Source: Selaginella moellendorffii (lineage: Eukaryota > Plantae > Lycopodiophyta). From it: DNA of 64,000 bases. The notes beneath the pieces were generated by a model that was not told the origin of the DNA, ran no database searches, and saw only the letters and a list, made by a program, of their open reading frames with translations. The DNA lies in NCBI RefSeq assembly GCF_000143415.4, contig NW_003314276.1, positions 1,657,083-1,721,082 of the forward strand, written 5' to 3'. This document shows, piece by piece, positions 21,761-37,649 of the stretch (the first letter of the stretch is position 1; the number at the start of each line of letters is the position of its first letter). Both the position numbers and the translations under genes were made by a program.

Positions 21761-22694
21761 CAAGAAATGTCTTGAAGTTCACAACCATGGTAAAAATACA
21801 TTGTTTATTTTTATTATGTTGAAAAGTGCATGATTATATTTTAGAGTTTGTGCTTGCTAATGATAATTACTTGCTTAAGAATGTTTGAATGCTTTATTCT
21901 GAAGAGAAACTTGGGAATATTAAGTTTTTCAAGAGCAAAGAGTCAATAAAAATGATGCATTCTAAGAGAATTAACCATAGAAGGCAACTATATTACTGAA
22001 GAATTTGTTATACCAGGTTTCCTTTATTTTTTATAGTTTTTATGCAATTTCATTTTTATGACTGGTTTGTCTTTAGTTCTATGAATGCTAAGTGTTAAAT
22101 ATTAATGTTAATATCTTAGCCATTGCACATCATGATAAATGGTGGGTAATGGTGTTGCCACTATGGCCTCTTACCCTCTTCAGGTAAGAACTCCTTACTC
22201 CATTGAGACTGTTCTAATGAAATTTTTATGAAGTCTTTAGTGTTCAAAAAGCTAGAACAATTTTTATGCCCTCTAGACTGAGAAAGAAACCATGAGTGTG
22301 GAGAGCTCAATAATATTATTTTCAGAAGTTTAATGACTTAGCTTTTAGGTTTACATAGCTCAGACATATTTTTAACTTAGAGGATAATATATAATTATAT
22401 ATATAGAAAGTGGGAGTTGTAATTCTTCCTAGTGAGATCTAAAGGATGGCAAAATTCCTATTAGAAATATATATAGTTTGATAAATTTTTTACTTGTTAC
22501 TCTTGAAGTTCTAGTCATGAGATAAAATAAAGAACTTCATACCTTTTTGGCCATAGAAATAGTGATAAGGAAGGAAAATTAATTAAACACTGATTACAAA
22601 ATAATTAAACAAAGTTTAATCATAGCCATTAGATTAAAGAATATCCAATATACTTGAACATTCTAAGTATATTCCTTACACATGAATTAAGTGC

Positions 22695-23340
22695 CACTGC
22701 AGCTGTGTGTGTGTGGGATGAGAGCAGTGTGCAAACAGTGATGGGAATTGATCAATTCCCTAGGATTTGCCGTCCAGCAGGCTCAGGCAAGCATCCCGGC
22801 GTGAATGGGCACTTTCAATTGGATAGAGATGAAAGTGTGCCCACAATGGAGGTTGCAAGATTTCCAGGGCTGGTTACATCTCTTGCATGGGCATTTCAAG
22901 GAATACAGTCTGGTTCTTGTGAAGAAAAAAAAATTGAGGTGAGAAGTGTGTACACATGGTTCACAACAAGTACACGTATACACTCCAGATACCACTTTGC
23001 ATTTGCTTTACTCACATCACTACATCACTTGAATGATCCAGGTCTGATCACTTTGGATTTGAAAGGGTTAAGGTTTGGATTGAAGCAGACTTGGCCATGG
23101 GATAAGCAGCTAGGAATCATGGTGTATCTGTTGCCTCCGATGGTCAGACAGGTGTGTTGTTCTGCACTCTATTCAAAAGGTGTTGGTGGAGTTTGCAATG
23201 CAATTTGTTTGAATGGAGCTGTTTTCTTTGTGGAGGAGAAGTCTTTCTTTATCTATAACTCATTTGAATTTAGCTAGTTACTTTCCTATTTCAGAAAGAA
23301 TCCAAGCTAGAAAAACTGGTAAAATTTACACGTTCACTAT
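22695..23340 (+). pseudogene. Heavily deleted F-box pseudogene, paralog of 4760-5801
   Basis: SCEEKKIEVRSVYT, TLDLKGLRFGLKQTWPWD and NAICLNGAVFFVEEKS shared with the left copy. Confidence 0.8.
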
Positions 23341-24041
23341 TATTACCATAACTTCTATTTGTGTGCAAATTCTATTGTTGTACTTAACAGTATTGATAAG
23401 ATTCACATAGACTTTGTAAACACGAATGAATGAATGTTCTGTGTTTTTTTTGTTTTTTTTAAATTTGCTATTAGCAAATTATTCAGTTTAATGACGTTAC
23501 CTTTTAGCAGTTTGGCTAAGCCACGAGAACGCTTACACTTTTTTTCCTTTTAAGCTAGATTTACTTGTTTTCCTTTGAAGTACTCTTCTTCTTCCTCGGT
23601 AACCCTAATTTCGCGAGCGAGGCAGGGCAGGAGCTCCAGCGCTGGGCGGTGCGCCCGATGCCGATGCCGCTCACCGATCCCGTCCGGAATGCGTGAGGTA
23701 TGCGCGTGTCTTGTCTCTCTTGTTTCTCTCGCCTTCTAGGGTTTCCTCCCGGCTCTTGTGCGCTCCTGATGCATGCTCCGGAGCTCTGCGCTGCCTGTGA
23801 TCGATGCCCCGGAGCTCATCTCGTGTGATCTGAGATCCTCCCTCCTTTCTTCTCTTTCTTCCCCTTTTTTTCTTCTCGTCCCTGGTCTTCTTCCCAGTTT
23901 AAAAAAATCATGCAGCGTTTTTTTTCTTTCTTCAGTGCCGATCAAGGCAGTCTCATCGGTGAGTGAGTGAGAGAGCTAGACAGAACTCAGGAGCTCCAAT
24001 CTTTCTCAGTAGCAAAGAAGAAAGAGGAGGAAGAAGAAGAC

Positions 24042-25241
24042 ATGGCTTCTTCCAAGACGATGCTCCATCCTCCTCCAAATGGAGGCGTCGGCCCGCAGCG
24101 CTCCGGCCTGGGCCGCCAGGGATCAATTTACTCGCTCACACTGGAGGAGCTCCAAAATTCAATGCTGGACCAGGGAAAAATCGGCAGCATGAACATGGAC
24201 GAGTTCATGAAGAACGTATGGACGGCCGAGGAGAACCAGGGCGGCGCCGCCAACACCAACACCAGCACCGCCACCTCCACCGCCACCGACAACCCGCCCG
24301 CTCCCTCCTCTCTCCAGCGGCAATCCAGCGTAAGTATCCCTCGAACTCTCAGCCAGAAAACAGTGGACGAGGTGTGGAAGGAGATCCAGGTCCAGAAGCA
24401 GCAGCAGCAGCAGCAAGATCTCTCTTATGGAGAGATGACTTTGGAGGACTTTCTCATCCGGGCCGGGGTGGTGAAGGAGGACACGGATGCTACTTCCGGG
24501 GGTGTCGTCCAGGCAATCGGCCCCCAAGGAACCATACCCAACAGCATCGATTCCATGGCTCAAAATCCAGATTGGTACAACTATCAGGTGAAGCAGCAGC
24601 AGCTCATGCACCAAGCTGCCGATCTCTCGAAAAGGCCGAACTTGATCGTCCCTGCGGGGCATCCCGGCGCGTTTTTCGATGCTCCATACGATGCCGTGCC
24701 TAGCAGCCTGGCTCTCTCCCCCGGGATGGCGACTCCGGAGGCTCCCGGCAAGAAGAGGAGCTTGGATCTCGTCGTGGAGAAGACTGTGGAGAGGCGGCAG
24801 AGGAGGATGATCAAGAACAGGGAGTCGGCGGCGCGGTCACGAGCGAGGAAGCAAGTAAGTCGCACTTTTGACCAAGGAGGCTTTTTTCCTACCCTTTTTT
24901 CTTTGTTTTACTTGCAGGCTTACACAGTGGAGCTAGAAGCCGAGCTTACGCAGCTCAAGGAAGAAAATACCAGATTGAAGAGATGGCAGGTAAGATTGGA
25001 TCACTCGTGATCGATCCAGACACTAAAGACGATGATGCTTTTCTTTTGATTTTTTAGGCCGAGGAAGCAGAGAGGAGAAGAAAACAGGTAACTTGCATTG
25101 CTGGAGAGAGTTTTACAGCTTTGTTACACCGTGTTTCTGACGCAGATAACCGAGGTTTTCCTGCCAGTAACGCAACAAGATCAGCAGCAGCACGCAAACG
25201 CGAGCTCACAAAAGCTTCAGAGGTGCCGGAGCTTTCCCTGA
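24042..25241 (+). CDS. ABI5: Group A bZIP transcription factor (ABI5/ABF/AREB); exons 24042-24854, 24918-24989, 25058-25087, 25146-25241
   Basis: C1 LGRQGSIYSLTLEELQN/GSMNMDEFMKNVWTAEE, C2 LQRQSS..RTLSQKTVDEVWKEI, C3 GEMTLEDFLIRAGVVKE, bZIP VERRQRRMIKNRESAARSRARKQ|AYTVELE, C-terminal RCRSFP; GT-AG introns keep the frame (symbol is family-level). Confidence 0.93.
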
Positions 25242-25885
25242 CTTCCATTTAACTCCACAGGAATCGGGTTGTAAAGTGGGGGTCTCGCTCGCTCCTCAAG
25301 CCATCGCAAAGATCTTCCCTTGATCTTCCGGGCCTGAGGAAGGAGAGCGAGATCGATCACCACTAAAAACACAGGAAAACGAATAAGGTAAGCAGCAGAT
25401 CATCCAGCAGCAGCAGCAGTAGCAGCTCTCATGTACCTCATCAGACGCGGCGGCCATGTACATTCGAGTTGGAAATGCGTGTATCTAAAACAGGAGCAAG
25501 GCAAAAGCAGCGGTTTTCCTTTAGGTGGTTTGTTCGTTCCGAGAGGTTAGTGACGAAGCTGGTTCTTCTAGCATTTGTGAGGATCTGTAGTTTAAAGGAA
25601 GCAAGCATTTGTGAAATCAGACGGAAAAAAAACAAGTGAAATTCTTTTCCAGCTTATCTCTCGATCGATCGCGAAGCGTTTTGTTTCACGTGAAGAAGGA
25701 GGAAGTGGTCCAGCCCAGTCCAGTCCGGCTCTCAATTAAAAGAGAGCTGTGCTTTTGTCTCGCGCGCTCGCAGCAACGCCGTCGTTGGCCATTTCCACAG
25801 GCCAATCATCAGGCGCTGCAAAATGGTGCCAGCTGAATCCATCGAGCTTTCCGTTGCGAGTTTGTTGTTTTGGTTCCATGTCGAC

Positions 25886-28050
25886 TCAGGGGCTCCATGT
25901 GTCCCGCCTCAGACGGGCCGGATTATCTGAGCTCTCCGGACGCAAGCGGCTTTTAGCGTGTCTGGATTGGATAAGTTTCTCGAGCAAAGCCATCGTAAAA
26001 TTTACCTGGAGCTTTCCTCCCACCGCATAGGCACTCGGGGACTTCGCTCTCGCCGGGCAGCTGCAAAAGTGAGAGAGTTTAGTAGCTTGGCTTTTGTTTA
26101 CCTTGTCCAATATTTCTGCCACCATGTTTTGCATGACAGTCAAGGTTCTTCTCATGCCGTGAGCCGACTTCAGAGAAGCCCTCCTCTTCAAACAGCTGCC
26201 TGACGATCTCCACTACGTCGTCCAGATCTTGGAGAGAGCACCTTCAGCTTACAATGAATAAACGATTACCGGTGACAGTGAGTAAAACAAGAAAAGAAGC
26301 ATGCCACTCTTCTCGCCCAACCGCGAGTTTGGCTGCTGGATTGTCTGCGTCTAGATGATCGTTAAGCGCGTAGATTTTTCAATCTAACAAGTGAATTCGA
26401 GCGTTGAGCAGACTTGAGAATGCAAACGTTCGCATTCTCCCTCCGCTTTGAGCAGTGACTGCTCTGGATCATATCTTGATCTCTCAGTGTTGACCCTGGG
26501 TTTGTTTTTTATTTCCTTGGCCCTGTCTTCGCATTCATAAAGGGAAAGTTTTCTACCGACTAAATCTACTTCTCGAGATGTAAAGCCATGGGAAAAGGTT
26601 TGTGTCCAAAGCGTAGCGTAGAGAGCGTTCCGGCTGCATTGTATGAGCCCGAAGAGCAGCAATAAAGCAGATTTTGTCCTTGAGTTTCCACCCTGTGCGG
26701 CATAAGATCAAAAGGACATGAAATTACTGTTAACGCTCGAGAGTTACCAAGGACTCTTGCAAAATCCTCGTCAGCTTTGAGTCAGGGGGTTGCAAAAAGG
26801 GAGCCAAGTCAACGAGTCAAGACAGTTGACTAAAGAATATGCTGTTATAATATGCATTACCGCTTAAAACAGAAAACGATTGCAGCTCACAGGTAAGCAT
26901 TTATCACATTTCCAAGAGCTGAAAGCGTCTTAGCCTCTGTTAGGAGCTTTCCTTTCCTTTGGCACATGTTTTCTCCACTTTCTCGGATCCAGCAAGGTCT
27001 ACCAGGAACAGCTTTCCGGTTTTCACGCTGCAAGAGACGATGATAAATAAGAGACGTAAAGAAGGGAACGTTCCTTTTACCTCCTGTCCTTGGAGTTCGT
27101 TTGCTGAATGGTTATCAAGAGCACACAGTGGCTTCTGCTGCTATTGGCGTTCATATCTGAAATGTTAGGAGACACACGCAGCAAGTCTTGTTAAGCCTCG
27201 CTCCCACAGTTCTATTCAAGATTCCTGCCTATGTATAAGCTTTAAGTTAGAATGGCCAAAGCAGCAATCAATCAATTGATGTCACTAAGCCATCAGCCCT
27301 CGAGTTAATCTAAGACGGGGGCTCTCGTCACCTCTGAAGCACCAGCGACAAATATTCCGCGTGTTTTATCTTCCTTTACTTGAAGATTGTCCTTGGTCGA
27401 GAGAGACTGCTGACCCGGTGTACGAGTTTGTCATCAAGCTGTCCAGGGTAAGGTTTTAATATTTATTATATCGCTTGTGAATAGGTGGAGAGAATAGAAG
27501 TTGCTCGAGACCTTAATACATTTTGGAATGTACTGGAAAATCCATCGTGCCACCCTCAGTAGAATTCCCTCTTGGCCAGGGTCATCAGTTCTCTCCACGA
27601 AATGACCCATAAGAACAAAGGCGAAAACCCTACCTCCATACTGAAAGTCATTGCAGCACCAGTCTAAAAAAGAAAACAAAGCATTGTGATACATGGATAG
27701 CTCTCATCGCATGAATGATTCGTGAGAGGACCTGTCCATACGCAAGAACCGTACCGTTGATGGCATTCATAGCATCTGTGTTTACAATTCCATGAGTAAA
27801 TCTCAGACATCGATCAAAACTTACCCTGCACAATAGGAAGCGCGACGAAGTCGAAAACATCCGCTTGAGATCTGTCTAAAGAAAACCCGATCTCTCCTGA
27901 GTGAAAGCGCGATTGTAAATCGTCCAATGCAGCTGGCGCTTACCTTGAAATCGAAGGATCGATCGTCCGGGATGCGAATGCGGTTGGATTTCGCTCCAGC
28001 GCTCGCGATCTCTCAGACATTGCACGAATAAACGAAACGAAGCAAAGAAC
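25886..28050 (-). pseudogene. Decayed tandem copy of the kinesin-1 gene
   Basis: Collinear with 30273-32746 but with many deletions, a lost start region and an internal inversion. Confidence 0.85.
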
Positions 28051-28237
28051 CATTAGAACAAGATCCCGCCCAACCACGGAAGTGAAGACGCCATTGGAGG
28101 CGATGGAAGATGACAGCGGCGTAAAAAATGCGTCTCATGCTTCAGGATGGGCACTCAAAATAGCATATAGATAGATAGATCATTTTTGCTAGCAGTCAGA
28201 CTTGTATTCTCTGGAGCCCTGCGAGCTGCTCAGATAA

Positions 28238-28331
28238 TACATAGTTTGTATAGCACCAAAATCTTTATTACATAGTTTAGCATAGCACCAAATCCGTATT
28301 ACATAGTTTGGCATAGCACCATAGTTTGGCA
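28238..28331. repeat. About 31-bp tandem repeat (3 copies plus a partial) in the lectin 3' region
   Basis: tacatagtttRgcatagcacca units. Confidence 0.85.
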
Positions 28332-28336
28332 ACTCC

Positions 28337-29122
28337 TTAAATGATGCTAAACGCCCCCATGGGGGTGGTTTGAACAGAACTGGATGGGCACGTCGAATAG
28401 ATAACACCGATGCCTTTCATATATGAGCTGGGGCTTGCATATCCAAAGAACGAGACTACGTTGCCTGGTGCTGTTTCGAAGAAAGTGCCACTCTTCGAAT
28501 TACCAAATGGACCATATGGTTTGGTTGCACTGGTTCTCGTGTTCTTGACATGCACAGTCAGCGAGAGAACACCTTCTCCCGCCCAACCAGTACCGCATGT
28601 TCTGTCTGTTCCAGTTGTACCCGATACCTTGTAAATGTACTCATCCGAGCTCAAAGAGATCTGCAGAAAGAAATTGATAAAGTAAGAAAAACGTTAACTT
28701 TAAAAGACCTCGTAGAGTGTGCCTCTCAGACCAGCTTGCGGAGGCGGGCTTGGTAAACATCCTGAACAGGAGTTAGTTCCATACATTTGAGTCCAGGAAG
28801 AGCCTGAAGACTTCCACTGAATGGCATCAACCACACAACCGCTGATTATGCGTAGCCCCTCCAGTGGCATACTCGTAAGACTTCCACTGAAGGGAGTACC
28901 ACCACTAGTAGTACCATATAAAGGAGACTTGCAAGGTGGAGGCGGTGGAGGCGGCGATGAACACCATGGGGCTTCGTTGCCACAGTTTCCCCATGGACTA
29001 CAGCAGGGGTATGCCTCCGGGCAGTCAGCGTCAGATGAACATGAACCAGGAGGAGGGGGTGATGATGGTGTTGCCGATACCAGCAAACACAATGCAAAGA
29101 GCGCTAGAGCACGAAGAAGCAT
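28337..29122 (-). CDS. Secreted hevein(CBM18)-jacalin chimeric lectin, about 245 aa; exons 29122-28709 and 28660-28337
   Basis: Signal peptide MLLRALALFALCLLVSA; CSSDADCPEAYPCCSPWGNCGNEAPWC (hevein-type C-C-CCS-xWGxCG-C); SPPPP linkers; jacalin-like YGTTSGGTPF, GLRIISGCVVDAIQW, ISLSSDEYIYKVSGTTG, YGPFGN, VVSFFGYA..GIGVIY; 48-bp phase-0 GT-AG intron. Confidence 0.85.
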
Positions 29123-30272
29123 GGTTCTAATGACTTATGCAAGTCACAGCAATGCTAGCACACATTTATAGGACTGTAAAGCATGAATATCAAGGGCGAC
29201 TGATTGTTTTCAGCAGGCACTGCTGCGTGTTTTCAGACCTGTGGTCCGCCCATGTGATCTCGGCTGCCTCAGTTGGCCTCGTCAGAGATACTTGTCACCA
29301 TTTTAGATGGACCACAGAGGCAAAGCATAATTTACAAGGTGAACACCACCACCAGGAACACTATTCCTTCACATGCATGGCTCTGGTCCAAGATTTCGAA
29401 TCTGTACGTAATAAGCTGTCCAAAGTAAATGAATAAGTTAAGGTAAGCTGTAGCAGCCCACGTTTTATTCGGACCACAACAATGACATCTCTTAGACATA
29501 GCAGCCATGTACATTTGAGTTGGAAGTGCATGCATCTAAAATAGGGTTCTGTTCAGACTTGCTATGCTCATCCTCACTCTATAATCCATGTTGTTCATCC
29601 TCACTTCATTACTATATGCCTTATCCTTACTCCATTGTCAAGGCCGGACTCTTGTTTGTCCTCTTTACCCCCTCCTCCAAAAAAAAAAAAGTTTGAAGTG
29701 TTGGGACAAAAAGGAGAAAATGAGAAAAATTGAGGAAAAACAATTGTGAAAAAAGAAAAAATAGATAAAGAAGCATTAAAAAAGAAATTTATAACAATTA
29801 ACAATACAAAAATAGGGAAGTTAGAAGAATATATGCTTAAAGCTTGGAAAATAAAAGATTTCCTATCATAAAATACTTCAACCACCACAATATAAACAAA
29901 AAATTCATACCATTTCAACACACAATTCAATAACAACATCCATTTGGCCCCGACATAATAAAGCTAAACAAATGCAATACTGAAGTGAGGCCAGACATAA
30001 ATGGCAGAGTGCAGAGCAAAATTGCAATTTTCCTTTAGGTGGCTAGCATTTGTGAGGATCTCTAAACAGAAGAAAAGTGAAATCATTTTCCAACTTATCC
30101 TCTCGATCAATCACGAGCTCTTAATCAAAACAGTGTGGTGCTTTTGTCTCGCGCTCGCAGCAATGGCATCGTTGGCCATTTCCACCAGCCAATCATCAGG
30201 CGCTGCAAAACGTTGCCAGCTGAATCCATCAAGCTTTCCGTTGCGAGTTTGTTGTTTTGGTTCCATGTCGAC

Positions 30273-32746
30273 TCACGGGCTCCATGTGTCCCGCCTCGGA
30301 CAGGCCGGATGATCTGAGCTCTCCGGACGCAAGCGGCTTTTAGCGTGTCTGGATTGGATTGGAAACAAACTTAAGTTTCTCGAGCAAAGCCATCGCAAAA
30401 CTCTACCTGGAGCTTTCCTCCCACCGCATCGGCACTCGGGGACTTCGCTCTTGCCGGGCAGCTGCAAAAGCAAGGCCAGGAAAGACATAAAGAAGAGTAT
30501 CGTAGCTTGGCTTTTCTTTACCTTCTCCAATATTTCTGCGATCTCGTCCACCGTGTTTTGCATAACAGTCAAGGTTCTTCTCATCTCCTCGTTTAAAACG
30601 GCCGTGAGATCGGCGTCCGGCACTTCAGAGAAGTCGCCAAGAAGGCCCTCCTCTTCAAACAGCTGCCTGACGATCTCCACTACGTCGTCCAGATTTGGGG
30701 TCTTCTTGGAGAGAGCCACCTTCAGCTACGATGGAAAAACACGATTATCGCTGACAGTGAGTAAAAACAACACAAGAAAGAAAGAGTACCTTTTCAAGCA
30801 TGCCACTGTTGGCTTCTCGCCCAACCGCGAGTTTGGCTGCTGGATTGTCTGCAAAAAAAGCCGTCTAAATGATCGTTAAGCACGTAGATTGCTCTATACC
30901 TTCTCCAGTTAACGAGTGAATTCGAGCGTTGAGCATTATCACTTGAGACCTCAAGCGTTCGCATTCTCCCTCCGCTTTGAGGAGTGCCTGCTCTAGATCA
31001 TGTCTTGATCTCTCAGTGTTGACCCTGGGCTTGTTTTTTATTTCCTTGGCCCTGTCTTCGCATTCATAAAGGCCGGCCACTTGCTTAAAAATTGGAAAGC
31101 TTTTACCTTAGTCCAAAGCGTAGCGTAGAGAGCGTTTCGGCTGCATTATATGAGCCCGAAGAGCAGCAACAAAGCAGAGTCGTCCGTGAGTTTCCACCCT
31201 GCGCAGCATAAGATCAAAAGAACATATGAATTTACTGTTAACGCTCGAGAGTTACCAAGGACTCTTGCAAAATCCTCGTCAGCTTTGAGTCACGGTAAGG
31301 TACATGGCACGCTTTCTCTGCGAAAAACGATTGCATTCTTTTGCCAGCCACGAAGATTACTTACCACAGGTCAAAGCATTTATCACATTTCCAAGAGCTG
31401 ACAACGATTTGTTGATTGTCTTAGCCTCCGTTAGGAGCTTTCCTTCGGTGCATGTTTTCTCCACTTTCTCAGATCCAGCAAGGTCTACCAGGAACAGCTT
31501 TCCGGTTTTCACGCTGCAAAGAGACGATGATAAATAAGATCTTATCCCTCACGAAAAGAAGGGAGCGTTTCTTCGACCTCCTGTCCTCCGAGTTCGTTTG
31601 CTGAATGGTTATCAAGAACACACAGTGGCTTCTGCTGCTATTGGCGTTCATATCTGAAATGTTAGGAGACACACGCGGCAAGTCTTGATAAGCCTCAGGA
31701 TACTCGTCGCTCCCACAGCTCTGTTCAAGATTCCTGCCTGTGCATAAGCTTAAGTTAGCATGGCCAAAGCAGCAATCAATCAATTGTAGATACCTTCACA
31801 GTCTTGAGCATCTCTTCCTCCGACTGAAGATAAACCTGTCACTAAGCAATCAGCACTCGAGTTAATCTAAGACGGGCGATTTCCTCACCTCTGAAGCACC
31901 AGCGACAAATATTCCGCGTGTTTTATCTTCCTTTACTTGAAGGTTGTCCTTGGTCGAGTCCAAAAGATCTCTGCATGACAATGACGAAGTATTAAAGTCT
32001 CGAGCAACTTCAAAACCATCGCAGCCTCGACCTTATTCTCTCCAGGTAGATCTCCACCTATTCACAAGCGAATATAAGAAATACAAAACGATATACGAAC
32101 ACCTTACCATGGACAGCTTGATGATAAACTCGTACACCGGGTCAGCAGTCTCAATGTACTGGAAAATCCATCGTGCCACCCTCGGTAGAATTCCCTCTTG
32201 GCCAGGATCATCAGTGCCCTGCGACATCTCTCCACGAAATGACCCGCAAGAACAGCCGAAATGTTACCTCCATACTGAAAGTCTTTCCAGCACCAGTCTA
32301 GAAACGAAAAACGAGAGAAGAAAACAGTGACATGGGTACCTCTCATCGTATGAATGATTCGTGAGAGTACCTGTCCATACGCAAGAACCGTCCCGTTGAT
32401 GGCATTCATAGCATCTGCGTTTAAAAATCCAATTAGCAACGAATTAAATCTCACAAAGCGAAGGCAATCGATCAAACCTTACCCTGCACAATTGGAAGCG
32501 CGACGAAGTCAAAGACATCGCCTTGAGGCGATCCCTCGTTGAAGACCCTGTCGAAAGAAAACCCGATCGCTCCCTCTTTGTCGTCCTGAATGAAATCGCG
32601 ATTGTAAATCGTCCAATGCAGCTGGCGCTCACCTTGAAATCGAAGGATCGATCGTCCAGGATGTGAATGCTGGATTTCGCTCCAGTGCTCGCGATCTCCC
32701 GGGAATTGCACGGCCGGAAGCGAACGCAAACGGAAACACTTGACAT
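30273..32746 (-). CDS. Kinesin-1 family motor (PSS1/KIN1-like), multi-exon; 3' end approximate
   Basis: [28 protein letters not shown]|[10 protein letters not shown] (P-loop), [14 protein letters not shown] (switch I), LVDLAGSE (switch II), [17 protein letters not shown]|[15 protein letters not shown]; short introns. Confidence 0.88.
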
Positions 32747-34753
32747 TGAGACAAAACCCTATTTCTACTGAAGTACAATTAATTTAAAGTATTGCCCTAA
32801 AATCTATAACTCTTTTTGTTTGGCTTTCAAGTTCAGTTCATAGACTTCTTGTGTTGGTGGTGCAGCTGGATAATGTCTATCACAGAAGTGGAAGGAACTT
32901 ATCGATCATGCAAAACAACTCTAGCCCAGTTTAGCTCTGAATTCTTTTCTAATATTTTCTTAATGGGCTGTTTGATCCAGCTGTTGGCAGCAGTCGGCAG
33001 GTGTCAAATCAAGTTAGGTTCTCTGCAAGAACGTGGCTGACAACTGCCAGGTTCTCCAAAACCTGGTTGCCAGCTGCCAGGTTCTAGAGAACCCTGTCAT
33101 CCTCGAATAATGTTATCCCATGTGTTTGTTAATGGTCTCACCACAGCTTGTTAATTGGGCATGGGCTCGCTCATTCCCTCCCAAATGCACTCGCCAGGCT
33201 AATGCCTGGCTTGCCCAGGAATGTGCTTGCCCTACCTCCTTCTTCCAGATGAGTATCATGCAAGAACTACCATCCTAAATCTTGGCTGTCCATTGGACTA
33301 TCATTTCTGTACAATTTAGACCATGAAGTTTAGTTATATGGTTTTGATGCTGTATAGTGGGATTTTGATAATTTTCAAATTGGTTTAAATTCAAACCACT
33401 TTCTTATATTAGGGTTTTTTGTTTTTCCTTTTCTCTTTGTTCAATTTTCATCCTCTTTAAACTTTGAACTAGTAATTGTAGTTGTTTGATGTTACACAAT
33501 AATAACACCAATCAGACTTAGTTAATGGTGGGGTTCACAATACATGGTGTAATTTTTTTTCTTTGGCTTGTCTGGCCAAATTTCTTTAATGGGAATTTTA
33601 GAGATGATATGTATTATTGATTCGATCACTTTATAATGAGCAACCAACCTCATATCATCCCCTCCTTTTAGAAGGGTAAAAGGTAATTAGAATTATTTAG
33701 TAGGTTAAAATCTAAAGAAACATTAGGAGGAGGCATTGGTGGATCTATAGACAATGTAATTTTTTAAAAATCCTTTTGTATAAAGCATTTTAATTGCTAT
33801 ATATACACAATTTTTTAAGGATTGGTTTATTAATGTTGTAGTGAATCTCATAATTTGCAATCCAACTTACCACAATATTTGATATGGTCCTTTTTACTGA
33901 GAAAGAAGCCCGTTAGACAAACCACATACTATAACATTGAGAAAATGAATCAACACTAAATCATCTATTTTATACTTTATAGGTGGACAATGATAAAAAT
34001 TGTAGCCCTATTGTTATCCCATTTATACATGGCCCAAGTGTTCAACAAACTTTATTTAAATAAGTGGGCAAATGCTCATCAAATATTGATCCTAAGACCT
34101 AACATTAGTATCTCATAGCAATCCCAGAGGTAAATTAAACTCTATTTTGGCAATATCAAATCATAATTATATAAGAGTTTATATTGTGAAATATCAATGG
34201 AACTTTATACCCTTATGATATATATATACACAAGAAATGACAAATAACCATCTTAATTCGAATGCTACAAGTTTGAGATTAGTCAAATGCCTTATTGACT
34301 GGTTGGGACTTTGAGGTTATTAGTTGGTTCATATATTTTACAATTATCTTTTTTAAGGTTTGAACAAACCATTCCACCAAATTATCTATTTATGGATGAT
34401 AAACACTTATGAAAATGTGATGTATCCCCAATTAAGACATCAAGATGTGAAATATCCCAGACATAAATGCAAGACCATTATCTAAAAGAATCCATTATAG
34501 ACAAGAATGTTGAAACACCACTCAATTGAAGAGGAAATACTTAATAATTATTATACATGCATTAGTAAGAGCATGAAATTCAACCTAATATATCAAATAG
34601 TCAGAAGGAATAATGATGTAGTCATTGCCAGTTGACTATGATAATGATCCCATTAGATCAAATGCCACCAACTCAAATAGATAGGAAACTGTAATTGACT
34701 CTAATTATCATTTTGTAATATGAGAGGAGTATTATAAGTTTTGCACCAAATGC

Positions 34754-34756
<3 letters not shown>

Positions 34757-34804
<48 letters not shown>
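34757..34804. repeat. (TA)n microsatellite
   Basis: About 24 TA units. Confidence 0.97.
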
Positions 34805-34805
<1 letters not shown>

Positions 34806-37649
34806 TAGATAATATTATATTATATATTTGGCTAATAAAAATACTTGTGTAGCTTCTTAGTCATACAATGATATTCCATATGCCCACTATGTAAAAGTTA
34901 TAATAAGCATGGAGAATATGTGGAATAAAAATCAAAAGCGCTACTAACCACAAATGGTCATTAAGATTTAGTCCTCACAAAGTTATAAATGTTATCACAA
35001 AATAATGAGAATATAAATTCTCAAATGATAAGTCATTAGCAAATGATGTAGAATTCTCAAATCCAGCACAAAGTCTTTGAATCTATGACTTAACCTTTTA
35101 AGCTTCATAAACCTCATTAAAAGAAAGTAATTCTAGTTTCACACCTTATGAAACACTAAACATTAAATACAGTAATTGTTGATGGTGATGAGGGAGGAAA
35201 AAGAGTTTTAGATTTTATTTCTCCAATATAAGCCTTCAAATGATCTCTTTTATAATTCATATTTGGTACTCCTTTAGGTGTTCTCTAGAAACTATTGGTG
35301 CTTGTTGCACGATTATCGGGTATTATTTATATGTGGAAATCCTTGTCATGTTCTTCTTTAGAGGGATTTTATGAAGTGGTGACATAATCGAAAGTGATCT
35401 TTTGGTGAAGGGGGTTGACAAAAATCCCATTGTTTTTTCAGCTTTTGTTTATGCTGTTATAAAGTTGTTGTATCCAAAGTTGGTGGTTAGTAATGCACCA
35501 TTTCTATATGCTTTGTGCCTTAAGAGAAAGAGAGAGGAGAGGGATTTCCACTAACTCCTAGTTTTATATTTTTCAAAGAAGACTCAAAGAAAGAATATTA
35601 CAAAACTAAAAGAGAAAACTTAAATGAAAATCACTCTATACTTTATGCTTTAATGCTTTATGTCATGAAGGGCTCCTCCTTATATAGTCTTTAAAACATA
35701 TTTTATATTTTGTTATTGATATCATAAAATATTGATGTAAGAAAGGTTAGATTTAGATGACTAGGATATATTACATAAGAAAATAGTTTTAAATGGAGGC
35801 AAAAATCTTTGCAAGGTTGGAGGGTATGCTTAAATATAAGAGTTATATAAGAAATCATTTTATAAAGATGGTGGAAGATAAGAATAAGTAAAGTGGAAAG
35901 ATATAGAAAGAAAAAAGTGTTTTTGGGGTTATAAAAAAAAGATGGTGGTAGAATAGTAAAGTGATTGGTAGAAGTATAGGGGGGATAATTTTATCTATAT
36001 ATACCTTGTACATATATATGTCTTGACTTTGAATATGGCATTTTTGGCTGAAGATTGCCATCACAATAGTACAAAATTCTCATTTAGCAAATACATTAAT
36101 CATGGAATAATAGACTTATCAAGAATATAAGAAGAGAGCAAAGAAGGGAAAGAAGCTTAAGAAAGGGTGTTAGCATCAATTGTAGAACTCTTGTAGTAAT
36201 AAATAACATCGAAGTTATATATACTATAAGTTTCAAAATTCATCAAGTAGCATAATCAATCAAGTTTTTTTGCTTTAATAATGAAGTGATTGTAATAATA
36301 ACATCCAAGAAATATGCAAGTATACATAAAGCTTTTTGAAACCCCAAATAGTTATTAGACACTCCTTCTCTATTGTGAAGTAGTTTACTTATGTTGGTTG
36401 CAACATATGGTTGATATATAAGATGAGATGATGCTGACTTCACACACTCATGCTCTCTTGCATCAACATACTTTTGAAATTAATATTAAAAGTATTCATA
36501 CATAAAATGAAAGGTCAAGTGTAGTAAAACTAGAGTACCCATCAACACCTCTTTAAGATTCACAAATACTCACCCACAAACTTTGGACAAGGTAAAAGAT
36601 AATATTAATAACTTCAACAATGCTCGCAATAGTGAAATGCTATTAGAAATATAATCAATAAAATGACTAAGATATTACACTTTGCTAAGGAAGCATTATA
36701 CATTGGTCACACACTTTAAAGTAAAAAAATTCATAATAGCCACAAGAATTTGCAAACTTTGGTAAAAAAATGTGGTATCCAAGATAAGTTATATCCTTGG
36801 ACCTAATATACACTTTAATTACTTTAACTTCAAGCCAAATGTTTACAACTAATTCAATACTTTACAAATATCACAAATGTGCTCCTCCCATGTCCCTTTT
36901 AAATGGATCAAGACATCATTGATAAAGTTAGTAGTCACTTTTAGCATATTACAAAGAACCTCATCTATCATCTACTAGAAAGTCATAAGAACTTTGTTTA
37001 AATTAAACAACATTACTAATAAAAACTAAATGGGGTATAGAAAGTTTTTGAAACATTTTCCTTAGCCATTGGCAGTTGCCAATACTTAAAAACAAAATTC
37101 AATTTAGTGAACTAACAATTTCTCCCAAATGATCTAGAAGATCAATAATGTAAAGAAAAGAGTACATATCTGGGATCATCACATTATTTAATAAAAATTA
37201 AATATTCTCATCAAAATTTCTCATAATATAAAGTTTATATACCCAAAGATTCCAAAACTTTCAGATAACATCTTTCTCAAACATTTACTTGTAAGATCTT
37301 AATCTCTTTTAATGACCAATGCTGGAAAAGAACCTTGATCAGACTAGCATCCCTAGTTAGAATAAGATGACATATTGCAATCTTAGCCCCAGAAAATCAA
37401 AGAGATCAACATACTTTTACTTAAATTAGTCATGCCACAACATAAAGACTGTTTGAGAGGGAGAATAAGAAGGAAACAGGGTAAGAAATAATCAAGAGAT
37501 TAAAGTAATAGAAGTAGAAATAGAAGCTAAAAGATAATATGGAATAAAAATGAGAGGAATAAAAGAAATATAAGGGACTACAAGGCAAGAGAGAGAAACC
37601 TCAAAATCACATTTGGCATTATTCTGTTGCAATTAATTCATACTAAGGA

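What the first reader, a model, noticed from the sequence alone, without database searches (positions are those of the whole stretch)
28337..29122. Secreted hevein(CBM18)-jacalin chimeric lectin with a fungal-looking chitin-binding module
Seen: an intact two-exon ORF with signal peptide, SPPPP, a 6-Cys hevein-type module, poly-Pro linker and a beta-prism/jacalin-like domain carrying extra Cys. Known: plant hevein domains are normally fused to GH19 or Barwin domains or repeated, and most plant jacalins lack signal peptides. The CPExxPCCSxxGxCG spacing recalls fungal CBM18 (Crh/Utr2 type). Inference: a bifunctional apoplastic lectin binding chitin plus mannose/galactose glycans, possibly antifungal or insecticidal, and either lineage-specific or assembled from a horizontally acquired module. 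I am not aware of this architecture being described.
Basis: partly seen in the sequence, partly recalled or inferred. Interest (0 to 1): 0.85.

Follow-up and report, generated by a model that had tools for sequence, protein, structure and literature searches.

The report
Secreted hevein-like plus jacalin lectin, spikemoss
This is a real, spliced and transcribed spikemoss (Selaginella moellendorffii) gene for a small secreted protein that joins a cryptic chitin-lectin-type (hevein-like) cysteine knot to a jacalin-type lectin domain. The gene is already in the databases but labelled only as jacalin, and its sugar binding is untested.

Summary
A minus-strand two-exon gene (29122-28709, 28660-28337, with a 48-bp GT..AG intron) encodes 245 aa. 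Its order is signal peptide, SPPPP, 6-Cys knot, poly-Pro linker, jacalin-like domain.

- **Transcription:** contigs of four runs from four studies carry exactly the predicted splice joint and cover only 28230-29140.
- **Identity:** the window is S. moellendorffii scaffold GL377580.1. The product equals the annotated protein SELMODRAFT_441296 (XP_002970895.1, UniProt D8RIC7), named only "jacalin-type lectin domain-containing".
- **Jacalin domain:** it passes Pfam (36 bits against a cut-off of 22).
- **Cys knot:** it fails Pfam's CBM18 cut-off (17-20 bits against 27.8). It is nevertheless linked with 98.7% hhalign probability to a 6-Cys CBM18 subtype, whose own profile hits wheat germ agglutinin (WGA) and hevein.
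- **Family:** four full-length copies and one frameshifted copy exist in this genome. None was found outside it.
- **Function is uncertain:** one of the three chitin-stacking aromatic residues is Asn/Asp, and the canonical jacalin sugar-binding Asp is Lys.
- **Origin:** a fungal or horizontally acquired module is not supported. The nearest modules come from unlabelled metagenome contigs, at least one of them Tara (marine).
- **Prior reports:** hevein+jacalin co-occurrence was reported before only with a kinase, in Chlamydomonas and Sphagnum.

Other readers of this scan noted the same stretch again and a paralogue on other DNA. I rate it a new variant of a known kind, of moderate interest.

The parts
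29165..29170 (-). TATAAA box, 30 nt upstream of the 5' end of the transcript contigs
   Evidence: Pattern scan of the upstream 600 nt. Contigs begin at 29140.
28230..29140 (-). Transcribed region (mRNA) as covered by assembled transcript contigs
   Evidence: table 8: contigs of X1, X2, X4 and X10 span 28230/28249/28294..29140/29091/29018. There is no cover in 27900-28229 or 29141-29600.
28709..29122 (-). Exon 1 coding part (aa 1-138): signal peptide, SPPPP, 6-Cys module, poly-Pro linker, N-terminal half of the jacalin-like domain
   Evidence: Translation. Identical to P0017:1-138.
29072..29122 (-). Predicted signal peptide, aa 1-17 (MLLR, then a hydrophobic core, then VSA with cleavage before T18)
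   Evidence: Read from the sequence. The cleavage site is inferred from the -3/-1 rule, since no signal-peptide predictor was on hand.
29048..29062 (-). Ser-Pro4 extensin-type motif (aa 21-25)
   Evidence: Sequence. Hydroxylation and arabinosylation are inferred from general knowledge of SP4 motifs.
28961..29041 (-). 6-Cys hevein-like module, aa 28-54, spacing C-5-C-5-CC-5-C-6-C
   Evidence: Pfam Chitin_bind_1 at 17-20 bits, below the 27.8 cut-off. phmmer hits to multi-CBM18 proteins. hhalign 98.7% to their modules, and that profile hits WGA and hevein. Model pLDDT is 71, with AcAMP2, WGA and CBM18 as top structural neighbours at non-significant E.
28934..28960 (-). Ser2-Pro7 linker (aa 55-63), followed by Cys64
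   Evidence: Sequence. Conserved in P0016 and P0018.
28661..28708 (-). 48-bp GT..AG intron, in phase after codon 138, with an in-frame stop
   Evidence: Sequence. The splice joint 28660|28709 appears in contigs of four runs.
28400..28930 (-). Jacalin-like (beta-prism I type) domain, aa 65-225, interrupted by the intron
   Evidence: Pfam PF01419 at 36.1 bits, E 1.1e-8, aa 74-225, profile positions 8-136 of 136. The family profile hits Parkia lectin, artocarpin, banana lectin and jacalin. The Foldseek top 50 are all jacalin-related lectins, although the model is poor.
28337..28660 (-). Exon 2 coding part (aa 139-245 plus stop)
   Evidence: Translation. Identical to P0017:139-245.
28238..28321 (-). 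3' UTR with a 31-bp tandem repeat (2.7 copies) and an AATAAA at 28263-28268

Best explanation
This is SELMODRAFT_441296, one member of a small family of secreted two-module proteins found only in Selaginella moellendorffii in the libraries searched.

Shown:
- The gene is transcribed and its 48-bp intron is removed.
- The product has a secretory leader and two extensin-type Pro runs.
- It carries an N-terminal 6-Cys knot homologous to truncated hevein/CBM18 modules.
- It carries a C-terminal jacalin-type domain with six extra Cys.

Inferred:
- After cleavage of the leader, the protein reaches the cell wall or apoplast. The Pro runs are hydroxylated and arabinosylated into stiff spacers, and the 12 Cys form six disulfides.
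- The hevein-like knot binds GlcNAc oligomers (chitin) through Ser42, Trp44 and Trp53. Binding is probably weaker than in hevein because the third aromatic position is Asn.
- The jacalin-type domain supplies either a second glycan site of altered specificity (the canonical Asp is Lys) or self-association, which would make the knot multivalent.
- The likely role is a defence lectin that coats or cross-links chitin-bearing surfaces.
For: - **Splicing and transcription:**
- **Identity:** the product equals P0017 and the window equals GL377580.1.
- **Jacalin domain:** Pfam 36.1 bits against a cut-off of 22. The PDB profile search gives E 3.6e-8 to 6e-5 against Parkia lectin, artocarpin, banana lectin and jacalin. 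All top 50 Foldseek hits are jacalin-related lectins.
- **Hevein-like module, direct hits:** in 1.84 billion representatives, phmmer hits proteins built of 6-Cys modules (E 8e-22 to 7e-4). Of the nine such proteins scanned, eight pass Pfam CBM18 and one (P0009) does not.
- **Hevein-like module, score per module:** in the hits with several modules, the score per module (about 19-24 bits) is close to the 17-20 bits found here.
- **Hevein-like module, profiles:** the Selaginella-only profile matches those modules at 98.7% probability, E 1.8e-16. Their profile, without Selaginella, hits WGA at 3.5e-22 and hevein at 3e-7.
- **Hevein-like module, conservation:** the six Cys, the Ser after CC and two Gly are invariant across the alignment.
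- **Structural neighbours of the module model:** AcAMP2, WGA domains, SmAMP2 and Hevea CBM18.
- **Maintained family:** all 12 mature Cys are kept in three distinct full-length paralogues.
Against: - The module is below Pfam's CBM18 cut-off.
- Alone, the Selaginella profile finds nothing significant in the PDB. Its best rows are a spider knottin (E 0.25) and elafin (0.66), ahead of Ac-AMP2 (2.3) and hevein (4.2).
- Foldseek E-values for the module model are all 0.19 or higher.
- The hevein Trp23-equivalent is Asn or Asp in all Selaginella copies, while every related module has Tyr, Phe, Trp or His there.
- The jacalin Asp that ligates sugar aligns with Lys (Arg in P0019), next to a 2-residue insertion.
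- The beta-prism model is of low confidence (pLDDT 47).
- dN/dS between paralogues is 0.2-1.2 on small counts, so constraint on the lectin loops is not demonstrated.
- No binding, localisation or defence data exist. No paper mentions the gene.
Confidence: 0.6

Rival explanations
1. Precursor model. The protein is a pro-protein that is cut in the Pro-rich linker. This would release a free 6-Cys hevein-like antimicrobial peptide and a separate jacalin-like protein, much as prohevein yields hevein plus a C-terminal domain and as Ac-AMP-type peptides are cut from longer precursors.
For: By sequence, the module's nearest solved relatives are stand-alone hevein-like peptides: Ac-AMP2 and avenatide aV1. 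The module is separated from the rest by an exposed Ser2-Pro7 linker. Processing of prohevein and of hevein-like peptide precursors is established knowledge and was not tested here.
Against: Cys64 sits after the linker and just before the jacalin domain, and the non-hevein Cys total six. That arrangement is compatible with an intact disulfide-bonded protein. No dibasic or other recognisable cleavage motif is seen in the linker. Hyp-glycosylated Pro runs usually resist proteases (general knowledge).
Confidence: 0.2
2. Not a lectin in either module. Both sugar sites have decayed. The protein would then be a cell-wall hydroxyproline-rich structural or protein-binding factor that merely keeps the two folds.
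For: One of the three stacking aromatics is lost. The canonical jacalin Asp is replaced by Lys in all copies, and by Arg in P0019. dN/dS approaches 1 in the jacalin part for some pairs. One copy is frameshifted.
Against: Ser42, Trp44, Trp53, both Gly and all Cys of the hevein motif are kept in every full-length copy. The gene is transcribed in runs of at least four studies. Jacalin-type domains are known to bind varied ligands with altered loops (general knowledge).
Confidence: 0.15
3. Horizontal origin. The 6-Cys module was acquired from a fungus or another microbial eukaryote and fused to a resident secreted jacalin gene.
For: The closest modules in 1.84 billion representatives are not from labelled plants. 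They come from unlabelled metagenome contigs, one of them a Tara scaffold. Secreted jacalin-like paralogues without the module exist in the genome (P0012, P0015, P0019).
Against: No hit carries a fungal label. The module is about 30 residues long and nine of them are invariant Cys, Gly or Ser, so similarity carries little phylogenetic signal. The oat peptide avenatide aV1 shares the spacing of the first six Cys except for one residue. The module lies in the same exon as the signal peptide and half of the jacalin domain, in a gene with a 48-bp intern intron and a TATA-box promoter. No phylogeny was possible.
Confidence: 0.05

Closest known systems
6-Cys hevein-like peptides (Ac-AMP2 of Amaranthus; also avenatide aV1 of oat, an 8-Cys peptide) and hevein/WGA modules (CBM18, PF00187)
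   Same: Shared features are the CC-S-x-aromatic-G-x-C-G-x4-aromatic-C core, three disulfide-forming Cys pairs, and truncation after the sixth Cys as in Ac-AMP2. They are also the top sequence and structural neighbours.
   Different: The module is below the Pfam cut-off. There is one extra residue between Cys2 and Cys3. The N-terminal part is 'C-S-S-D-A-D-C-P' instead of the Gly-rich loop. The Trp23/Tyr20-equivalent aromatic is Asn or Asp. It is fused to a jacalin-type domain instead of being free, repeated, or fused to GH19 or Barwin.
Hevein/jacalin/protein kinase proteins listed for Chlamydomonas reinhardtii and Sphagnum fallax (Van Holle and Van Damme 2019, PMC6362431, Table S3)
   Same: These are the only published co-occurrences of a hevein and a jacalin domain in one plant-lineage protein that I found.
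   Different: Those proteins carry a protein kinase, so they are receptor-like. This one is a 245-aa secreted protein without a kinase or a membrane span. The same survey counts the Selaginella paralogue 441276 as plain 'jacalin'. Their sequences were not compared here.
Solanaceae chitin-binding lectins (potato, tomato, Datura): hevein modules joined to an extensin-like Ser-Hyp4 domain
   Same: Both are secreted and combine a hevein-type module with Ser-Pro4-type hydroxyproline-rich stretches (from my own knowledge, not tested here).
   Different: The Solanaceae lectins have several 8-Cys hevein modules and no jacalin domain. The Pro-rich parts here are only 4 and 7 prolines long.
Chimeric and secreted jacalin-related lectins (monocot dirigent-jacalin such as OsJAC1; Moraceae galactose-specific jacalins with a leader)
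   Same: Both have a jacalin-type domain fused to, or preceded by, another module. OsJAC1's lectin domain is among the structural neighbours.
   Different: The partner module here is a hevein-like knot. This domain has a Cys-x-x-Cys-containing loop insertion, six extra Cys, and Lys in place of the sugar-ligating Asp. Monocot chimeric jacalins are cytoplasmic (general knowledge).
Other secreted jacalin-like proteins of S. moellendorffii (P0019 = SELMODRAFT_416970; P0012/P0015)
   Same: They share the subfamily signature at the domain start (K-S-P-L-Y-G-G) and the D-E-Y-I-Y-K motif, and they have a signal peptide. P0019 is 37% identical over 90% of the domain.
   Different: P0019 carries its Pro-rich linker and a different Cys-rich module at the C-terminus. 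P0012 and P0015 have no hevein-like module.

Membership tests
Hevein / CBM18 (Pfam PF00187 Chitin_bind_1) | Score at or above Pfam's gathering cut-off (27.8 bits) | tested here: not met
   The score is 19.7 bits for exon 1, 17.2 for the whole protein and 19.3 for the module alone. In the hits with several modules that do pass, the score per module is about 19-24 bits. The shortfall therefore reflects a single, truncated module.
Hevein / CBM18 (Pfam PF00187 Chitin_bind_1) | Cysteine framework C..C..CC..C..C with CC-S and G-x-C-G | tested here: met
   Cys are at 28, 34, 40, 41, 47 and 54. Ser42, Gly45 and Gly48 are present. These columns are invariant across 22 modules.
Hevein / CBM18 (Pfam PF00187 Chitin_bind_1) | Statistically supported homology to bona fide members | tested here: met
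   hhalign gives 98.7% probability, E 1.8e-16, to modules of proteins, most of which pass Pfam CBM18. Those modules' profile hits WGA at 3.5e-22 and hevein at 3e-7. The direct Selaginella-only profile against the PDB is not significant.
Hevein / CBM18 (Pfam PF00187 Chitin_bind_1) | Chitin-contacting Ser plus three aromatic residues (hevein Ser19, Trp21, Trp23, Tyr30) | tested here: not met
   Ser42, Trp44 and Trp53 are present. The Trp23-equivalent is Asn46, and Asp in P0018. Three of the four positions are kept.
Hevein / CBM18 (Pfam PF00187 Chitin_bind_1) | Hevein fold with the disulfide knot | tested here: inconclusive
   The AF2 model has pLDDT 71, about 82 in the core. The Foldseek list is headed by AcAMP2, WGA, SmAMP2 and Hevea CBM18, but all E-values are 0.19 or higher.
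Hevein / CBM18 (Pfam PF00187 Chitin_bind_1) | Binds chitin or GlcNAc oligomers | not testable with these tools
   This needs a binding assay.
Jacalin-like lectin domain (Pfam PF01419) | Score at or above Pfam's gathering cut-off (22 bits) over most of the profile | tested here: met
   The score is 36.1 bits, E 1.1e-8, over aa 74-225 and profile positions 8-136 of 136. Exon 2 alone scores 31.3 bits.
Jacalin-like lectin domain (Pfam PF01419) | Beta-prism I fold | tested here: inconclusive
   The AF2 model is poor (pLDDT 47, all-beta, C-terminal third unresolved). Even so, the top 50 Foldseek hits are all jacalin-related lectins, with E 1.3e-4 to 4.5e-3 and TM 0.34-0.55.
Jacalin-like lectin domain (Pfam PF01419) | Sugar-ligating Asp of the C-terminal G-x-x-x-D / YLD-x-x-G loop | tested here: not met
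   It aligns with Lys (Y-M-K-G-I-G) next to a 2-residue insertion, against banana and Parkia lectins. P0019 has Arg there.
Jacalin-like lectin domain (Pfam PF01419) | Binds mannose- or galactose-type glycans | not testable with these tools
   This needs a glycan array or ITC.
Hevein/jacalin/protein kinase architecture (PMC6362431, Table S3) | Protein kinase domain after the two lectin domains | tested here: not met
   The protein ends 20 residues after the jacalin domain. No kinase hit appears in Pfam.
Extensin-type hydroxyproline-rich motif | Ser-Pro4 repeats | tested here: met
   There is one S-P4 (aa 21-25) and one S-S-P7 (aa 55-63). These are only two short motifs, so this is not an extensin proper. 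Hydroxylation and glycosylation cannot be tested here.

The most novel reading that the evidence does not exclude
A family of secreted two-lectin proteins, so far seen only in Selaginella moellendorffii, whose beta-prism half is being reshuffled between loci. Exon 1 groups with the syntenic copy and exon 2 with the other locus.

Its chitin-type knot belongs to a rare 'C-x-S-D-x-D-C-P' CBM18 subtype, otherwise seen here only in unlabelled metagenome proteins (one from a Tara scaffold). That would point either to an ancient retained module lost from other land plants or to a horizontally acquired one.

In this reading the gene would be a fast-diversifying extracellular immune lectin with a new dual recognition mode.
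Probability: 0.12. Interest if true: 0.6.

Novelty: new variant of a known kind. Interest (0 to 1): 0.36.

Why it matters
Published plant lectin surveys count this family as plain jacalins, because the N-terminal knot falls below Pfam's threshold. Recognising it adds a kinase-less, secreted hevein-like plus jacalin layout to the catalogue of plant lectin architectures.

It also shows that a lycophyte's secreted jacalin subfamily has been combined with different cysteine-rich modules: N-terminal here, C-terminal in SELMODRAFT_416970.

If the protein binds chitin, it would be a compact natural two-domain antifungal or insect-directed lectin, and a test case for how altered jacalin loops change specificity. 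If it does not, it is a minor annotation refinement of an uncharacterised gene that exists in a few recent copies.

Tried and rejected
- **Joined query left out.** The exons were searched apart by reference. Full-length searches used the stored database protein P0017, which the look-up returned and which equals both exons.
- **Word-indexed homologue searches gave little.** Queries with P0001, P0017:65-245 and P0017:22-64 found only S. moellendorffii clusters. The module-only search returned only the family itself.
- **ESM Atlas gave a lead only.** By features, the best clusters were oomycete-rich jacalin clusters at 0.76 and 0.75, below the level that counts. I did not use this.
- **Full-length alignments were unusable.** MAFFT misplaced the N-termini of P0019 and P0012 onto the hevein region (A2 and A5). 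I therefore folded the two domains separately.
- **Selaginella-only module profile against the PDB** found nothing significant.
- **Promoter scan.** There is no W-box, GCC-box or G-box within 600 nt upstream, only a TATA box.
- **dN/dS.** Counts are too small for a claim of positive or purifying selection.
- **Nested-gene idea rejected.** Annotated kinesin models flank the lectin, which suggested a gene inside a kinesin intron. The upstream kinesin region, however, matches the region downstream of the lectin in the partner scaffold at about 76%. This fits two tandem kinesin copies with the lectin between them.
- **Literature.** A search by locus tags and accessions found no paper.
- **Complex prediction** was not requested, because I make no claim of a specific protein-protein contact.
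Full report
**1. What is there**

On the minus strand of the window, an ATG at 29122 opens a 138-codon exon that ends at 28709. A 48-bp GT..AG intron (28708-28661) follows, then a 107-codon exon that ends with a stop at 28337-28339. The intron length is a multiple of three but it contains an in-frame stop, so splicing is needed to reach the second exon.

The mature message is real. When contigs of four public runs from four different studies were laid on 27900-29600, each run had a contig joining 28660 to 28709. These contigs skip exactly 48 nt, have no other differences, and cover only 28230/28249..29140, leaving the flanks bare. Twenty runs from seven studies hold the stretch.

Contigs that lack the intron and stop at both ends of the gene can only come from RNA, even though the runs' library type is not on record. 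A TATAAA lies at -30 from the contigs' 5' end, and an AATAAA (28263-28268) lies 15-34 nt before their 3' ends.

**2. Whose gene it is**

A 12,786-bp locus fetched from GenBank assembly GCA_000143415.2, scaffold GL377580.1 (Selaginella moellendorffii v1.0), is 100% identical to window 22337-35122. The two exon translations equal residues 1-138 and 139-245 of P0017. That protein is EFJ28221.1 / XP_002970895.1 / SELMODRAFT_441296 / UniProt D8RIC7, named 'hypothetical' or 'Jacalin-type lectin domain-containing protein'.

So the gene model itself is not new. What the databases and the lectin surveys do not show is the N-terminal module. No paper in the library mentions the locus tags.

The exons were searched apart, and whole-protein searches used the stored protein P0017 by reference.

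**3. Anatomy of the product (245 aa)**

- aa 1-17: signal peptide (basic Arg4, hydrophobic core, V-S-A). This is read from the sequence, and the cleavage site is inferred.
- aa 20-25: S-S-P-P-P-P.
- aa 28-54: six Cys spaced C-5-C-5-CC-5-C-6-C.
- aa 55-63: S-S-P7, followed by Cys64.
- aa 65/74-225: jacalin-like domain.
- aa 226-245: a 20-residue tail.

The mature protein has 12 Cys, six of them outside the knot at 64, 96, 119, 122, 160 and 229. All 12 are kept in the paralogues.

**4. The jacalin-like domain**

- Pfam PF01419 matches aa 74-225 over profile positions 8-136 of 136, at 36.1 bits (cut-off 22), E 1.1e-8. Exon 2 alone already passes.
- A profile of the family (A3) finds Parkia lectin (3.6e-8), artocarpin (3e-7), banana lectins (1e-6 to 7e-6) and jacalin (6e-5) in the PDB.
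- The AlphaFold model, built from only seven sequences, is poor (pLDDT 47). Its top 50 Foldseek neighbours are nevertheless all jacalin-related lectins, with E 1.3e-4 to 4.5e-3.

I accept membership of the jacalin-like superfamily. Two features argue against assuming mannose or galactose binding:

- The Asp of the C-terminal 'Y-L-D / F-I-D-x-I-G' loop is, by established knowledge, the main sugar ligand of jacalin-related lectins. Here it aligns with Lys, next to a two-residue insertion. P0019 has Arg at that position.
- A Cys-x-x-Cys, Pro-rich loop is inserted in the middle of the domain.

Van Holle and Van Damme also report that only one of three jacalin motifs is recognisable in Selaginella jacalins (PMC6362431).

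**5. The 6-Cys module**

Direct evidence is weak:

- Pfam Chitin_bind_1 scores 17-20 bits against a cut-off of 27.8.
- phmmer of exon 1 against the PDB gives Ac-AMP2 at 1.9, avenatide aV1 at 3.9 and hevein at 9.
- A Selaginella-only profile gives nothing significant. A spider knottin and elafin rank nominally ahead of Ac-AMP2 and hevein.

Indirect evidence is strong:

- An exhaustive phmmer of exon 1 against 1.84 billion representatives gave only 12 hits at E <= 1e-3. Ten of them are proteins built from hevein-type Cys modules separated by Pro/Thr-rich linkers. Nine of the ten have modules spaced the same way or nearly so, and P0005 has a longer first loop (E 8e-22 to 7e-4).
- Nine of the ten were scanned with Pfam. 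Eight pass Chitin_bind_1 and P0009 does not. In the hits with several modules the score is about 19-24 bits per module, close to the score here.
- The Selaginella-only profile (A6) aligns to a profile of those modules without Selaginella (A7) at 98.7% hhalign probability, E 1.8e-16.
- A7 on its own hits wheat germ agglutinin (3.5e-22), pokeweed and nettle lectins, hevein (3e-7) and Ac-AMP2 (3e-7).
- The module model (pLDDT 71, about 82 in the core) has AcAMP2, WGA domains, SmAMP2 and the Hevea CBM18 as its best structural neighbours, although all at E >= 0.19.

I conclude, at about 80%, that it is a truncated (6-Cys) hevein-type module.

Of the chitin-contact positions of hevein (Ser19, Trp21, Trp23, Tyr30; established knowledge), Ser42, Trp44 and Trp53 are present. 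The Trp23-equivalent is Asn (Asp in P0018), whereas all 19 related modules have an aromatic residue or His there. Chitin binding is therefore plausible, probably weakened, and unproven.

**6. Family and surroundings**

- **Full-length copies.** S. moellendorffii has P0017 (this gene), P0016 (SELMODRAFT_410458, on scaffold GL377577.1 in the same kinesin / lectin / kinesin fragment / bZIP context, so the syntenic partner) and P0018 (441276). P0018 is present twice, 30 kb apart on GL377580.1, next to an alpha/beta-hydrolase gene.
- **Damaged copy.** P0001 (410408) is the partner of the P0018 locus on GL377577.1. Its annotated 184-aa model lacks the leader and knot only because the upstream ORF that encodes them (L001 3825-4106) has a one-codon deletion and then a frameshift.
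- **Outside this species.** Nothing matched both halves of exon 1. The word-indexed searches returned only Selaginella clusters.
- **More distant secreted jacalin-like paralogues.** They share the K-S-P-L-Y-G-G start. P0012 and P0015 have no knot. P0019 has a Pro-rich linker and a different Cys-rich module at its C-terminus.
- **Divergence.** The copies are young (dS 0.05-0.17) and dN/dS is 0.2-1.2 on small counts.
- **Mosaic pattern.** Exon 1 of the window gene is closest to its syntenic partner (96.9% against 93.2%). Exon 2 is closer to the other locus (94.1-96.5% against 90.7%). The site patterns differ between the exons (Fisher p = 1.9e-4). This points to inter-locus gene conversion, or to acceleration specific to P0016.

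**7. Origin of the module**

- None of the hits carries a fungal label.
- The one hit for which I have an environmental source comes from a Tara metagenome scaffold. One cluster includes a diatom GH18 protein, but of a different, longer-loop module type.
- The oat peptide avenatide aV1 has nearly the same spacing over its first six Cys.
- With about 30 residues, nine of them invariant across the alignment, no reliable tree can be built.
- The module shares an exon with the leader and half of the jacalin domain.

**8. Comparison with what is known**

The lectin survey of 38 plant-lineage genomes lists 'hevein/jacalin/protein kinase' once each in Chlamydomonas and Sphagnum. It calls the hevein+jacalin pairing a striking, unique combination (PMC6362431, text and Table S3).

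For Selaginella that survey lists only jacalin, jacalin x4 and dioxygenase/jacalin. It files the paralogue 441276 under plain 'Jacalin'.

A dedicated search for hevein-like genes in S. moellendorffii found ten, fused to GH19 or a lytic-transglycosylase-type domain or standing alone. None was fused to jacalin (PMC10378081).

The kinase-less secreted layout is thus unlisted, because the module is sub-threshold. It is, however, a new combination of two familiar lectin domains, not a new kind of protein.

From my own knowledge, the nearest functional analogies are these:
- The Solanaceae lectins (hevein modules plus extensin-like stretches).
- Prohevein-type precursors.
- The monocot chimeric jacalins.

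**9. Mechanism and odds**

| Claim | My odds |
|---|---|
| Gene real, spliced and transcribed | about 0.99 |
| Secreted | about 0.85 |
| Jacalin-type fold | about 0.95 |
| Hevein-type homology of the knot | about 0.8 |
| Actual chitin binding | about 0.5 |
| Role in defence | about 0.5 |

My best reading is an apoplastic, Hyp-glycosylated, disulfide-rich lectin. Its knot would bind GlcNAc oligomers, and its beta-prism would add a second, non-canonical site or provide oligomerisation. The main rival is proteolytic release of a free hevein-like peptide.

**10. Verdict**

The finding refines the annotation of a known but uncharacterised gene and adds a new variant to the known chimeric lectins. 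It is of moderate interest until binding is measured.

Noticed in passing
window 28337-29122 compared with L005 6001-6788 and L006/L007 6001-6786: The gene looks like a mosaic. Exon 1 is closest to the syntenic copy P0016 (96.9% against 93.2% to P0018). Exon 2 is closer to the other locus (94.1-96.5% to P0018 and P0001, against 90.7% to P0016). Site patterns differ between the exons (Fisher p = 1.9e-4). This suggests inter-locus gene conversion or acceleration specific to P0016.
   Followed up: partly
L001 3825-4106 and 4001-4603 (GL377577.1, SELMODRAFT_410408): The annotated 184-aa 'jacalin' model is a truncated reading of a damaged copy. The leader and hevein-like knot are encoded just upstream, but with a one-codon deletion in the knot and a frameshift after the poly-Pro run.
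   Followed up: partly
L006 and L007 (GL377580.1, 1317778-1330563 and 1347780-1360565): Two genes encode the identical protein P0018 and lie 30 kb apart. Each is followed by an alpha/beta-hydrolase gene, which indicates a recent segmental duplication.
   Followed up: no
window 30125-32746 (-), 26940-28053 (-), 24042-25241 (+): The lectin gene lies between an annotated 552-aa kinesin (Microtub_bd + Kinesin) and a 163-aa kinesin fragment on the same strand, with a bZIP gene beyond. The upstream kinesin region matches the region downstream of the lectin in the partner scaffold at about 76%. This suggests two tandem kinesin copies, the second decayed.
   Followed up: partly
window 28238-28321: The 3' UTR holds a 31-bp tandem repeat of 2.7 copies, 87% matching. 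Its meaning is unknown.
   Followed up: no
P0019 (SELMODRAFT_416970, 263 aa): This secreted jacalin-like protein has the reverse layout: leader, jacalin domain (79 bits), Pro-rich extensin-like linker, then a C-terminal Cys-rich module of unknown type.
   Followed up: partly
L002, L003, L004 (ENA metagenome contigs, one a Tara scaffold); proteins P0002-P0011: These hits show a distinct 6-Cys CBM18 subtype with consensus C-x-S-D-x-D-C-P-x-x-A-P-C-C-S-x-W-G-Y-C-G-x-G-x-x-Y-C. In most of them it stands in tandem with Pro/Thr-rich linkers, in short unlabelled metagenome contigs whose organisms are unknown.
   Followed up: partly
window 28989-29137, run X10: One 184-nt contig folds back on itself, joining 29023 to 29137 on opposite strands. 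This is most likely an assembly artefact at the 5' end of an abundant transcript (tables 5 and 8).
   Followed up: no
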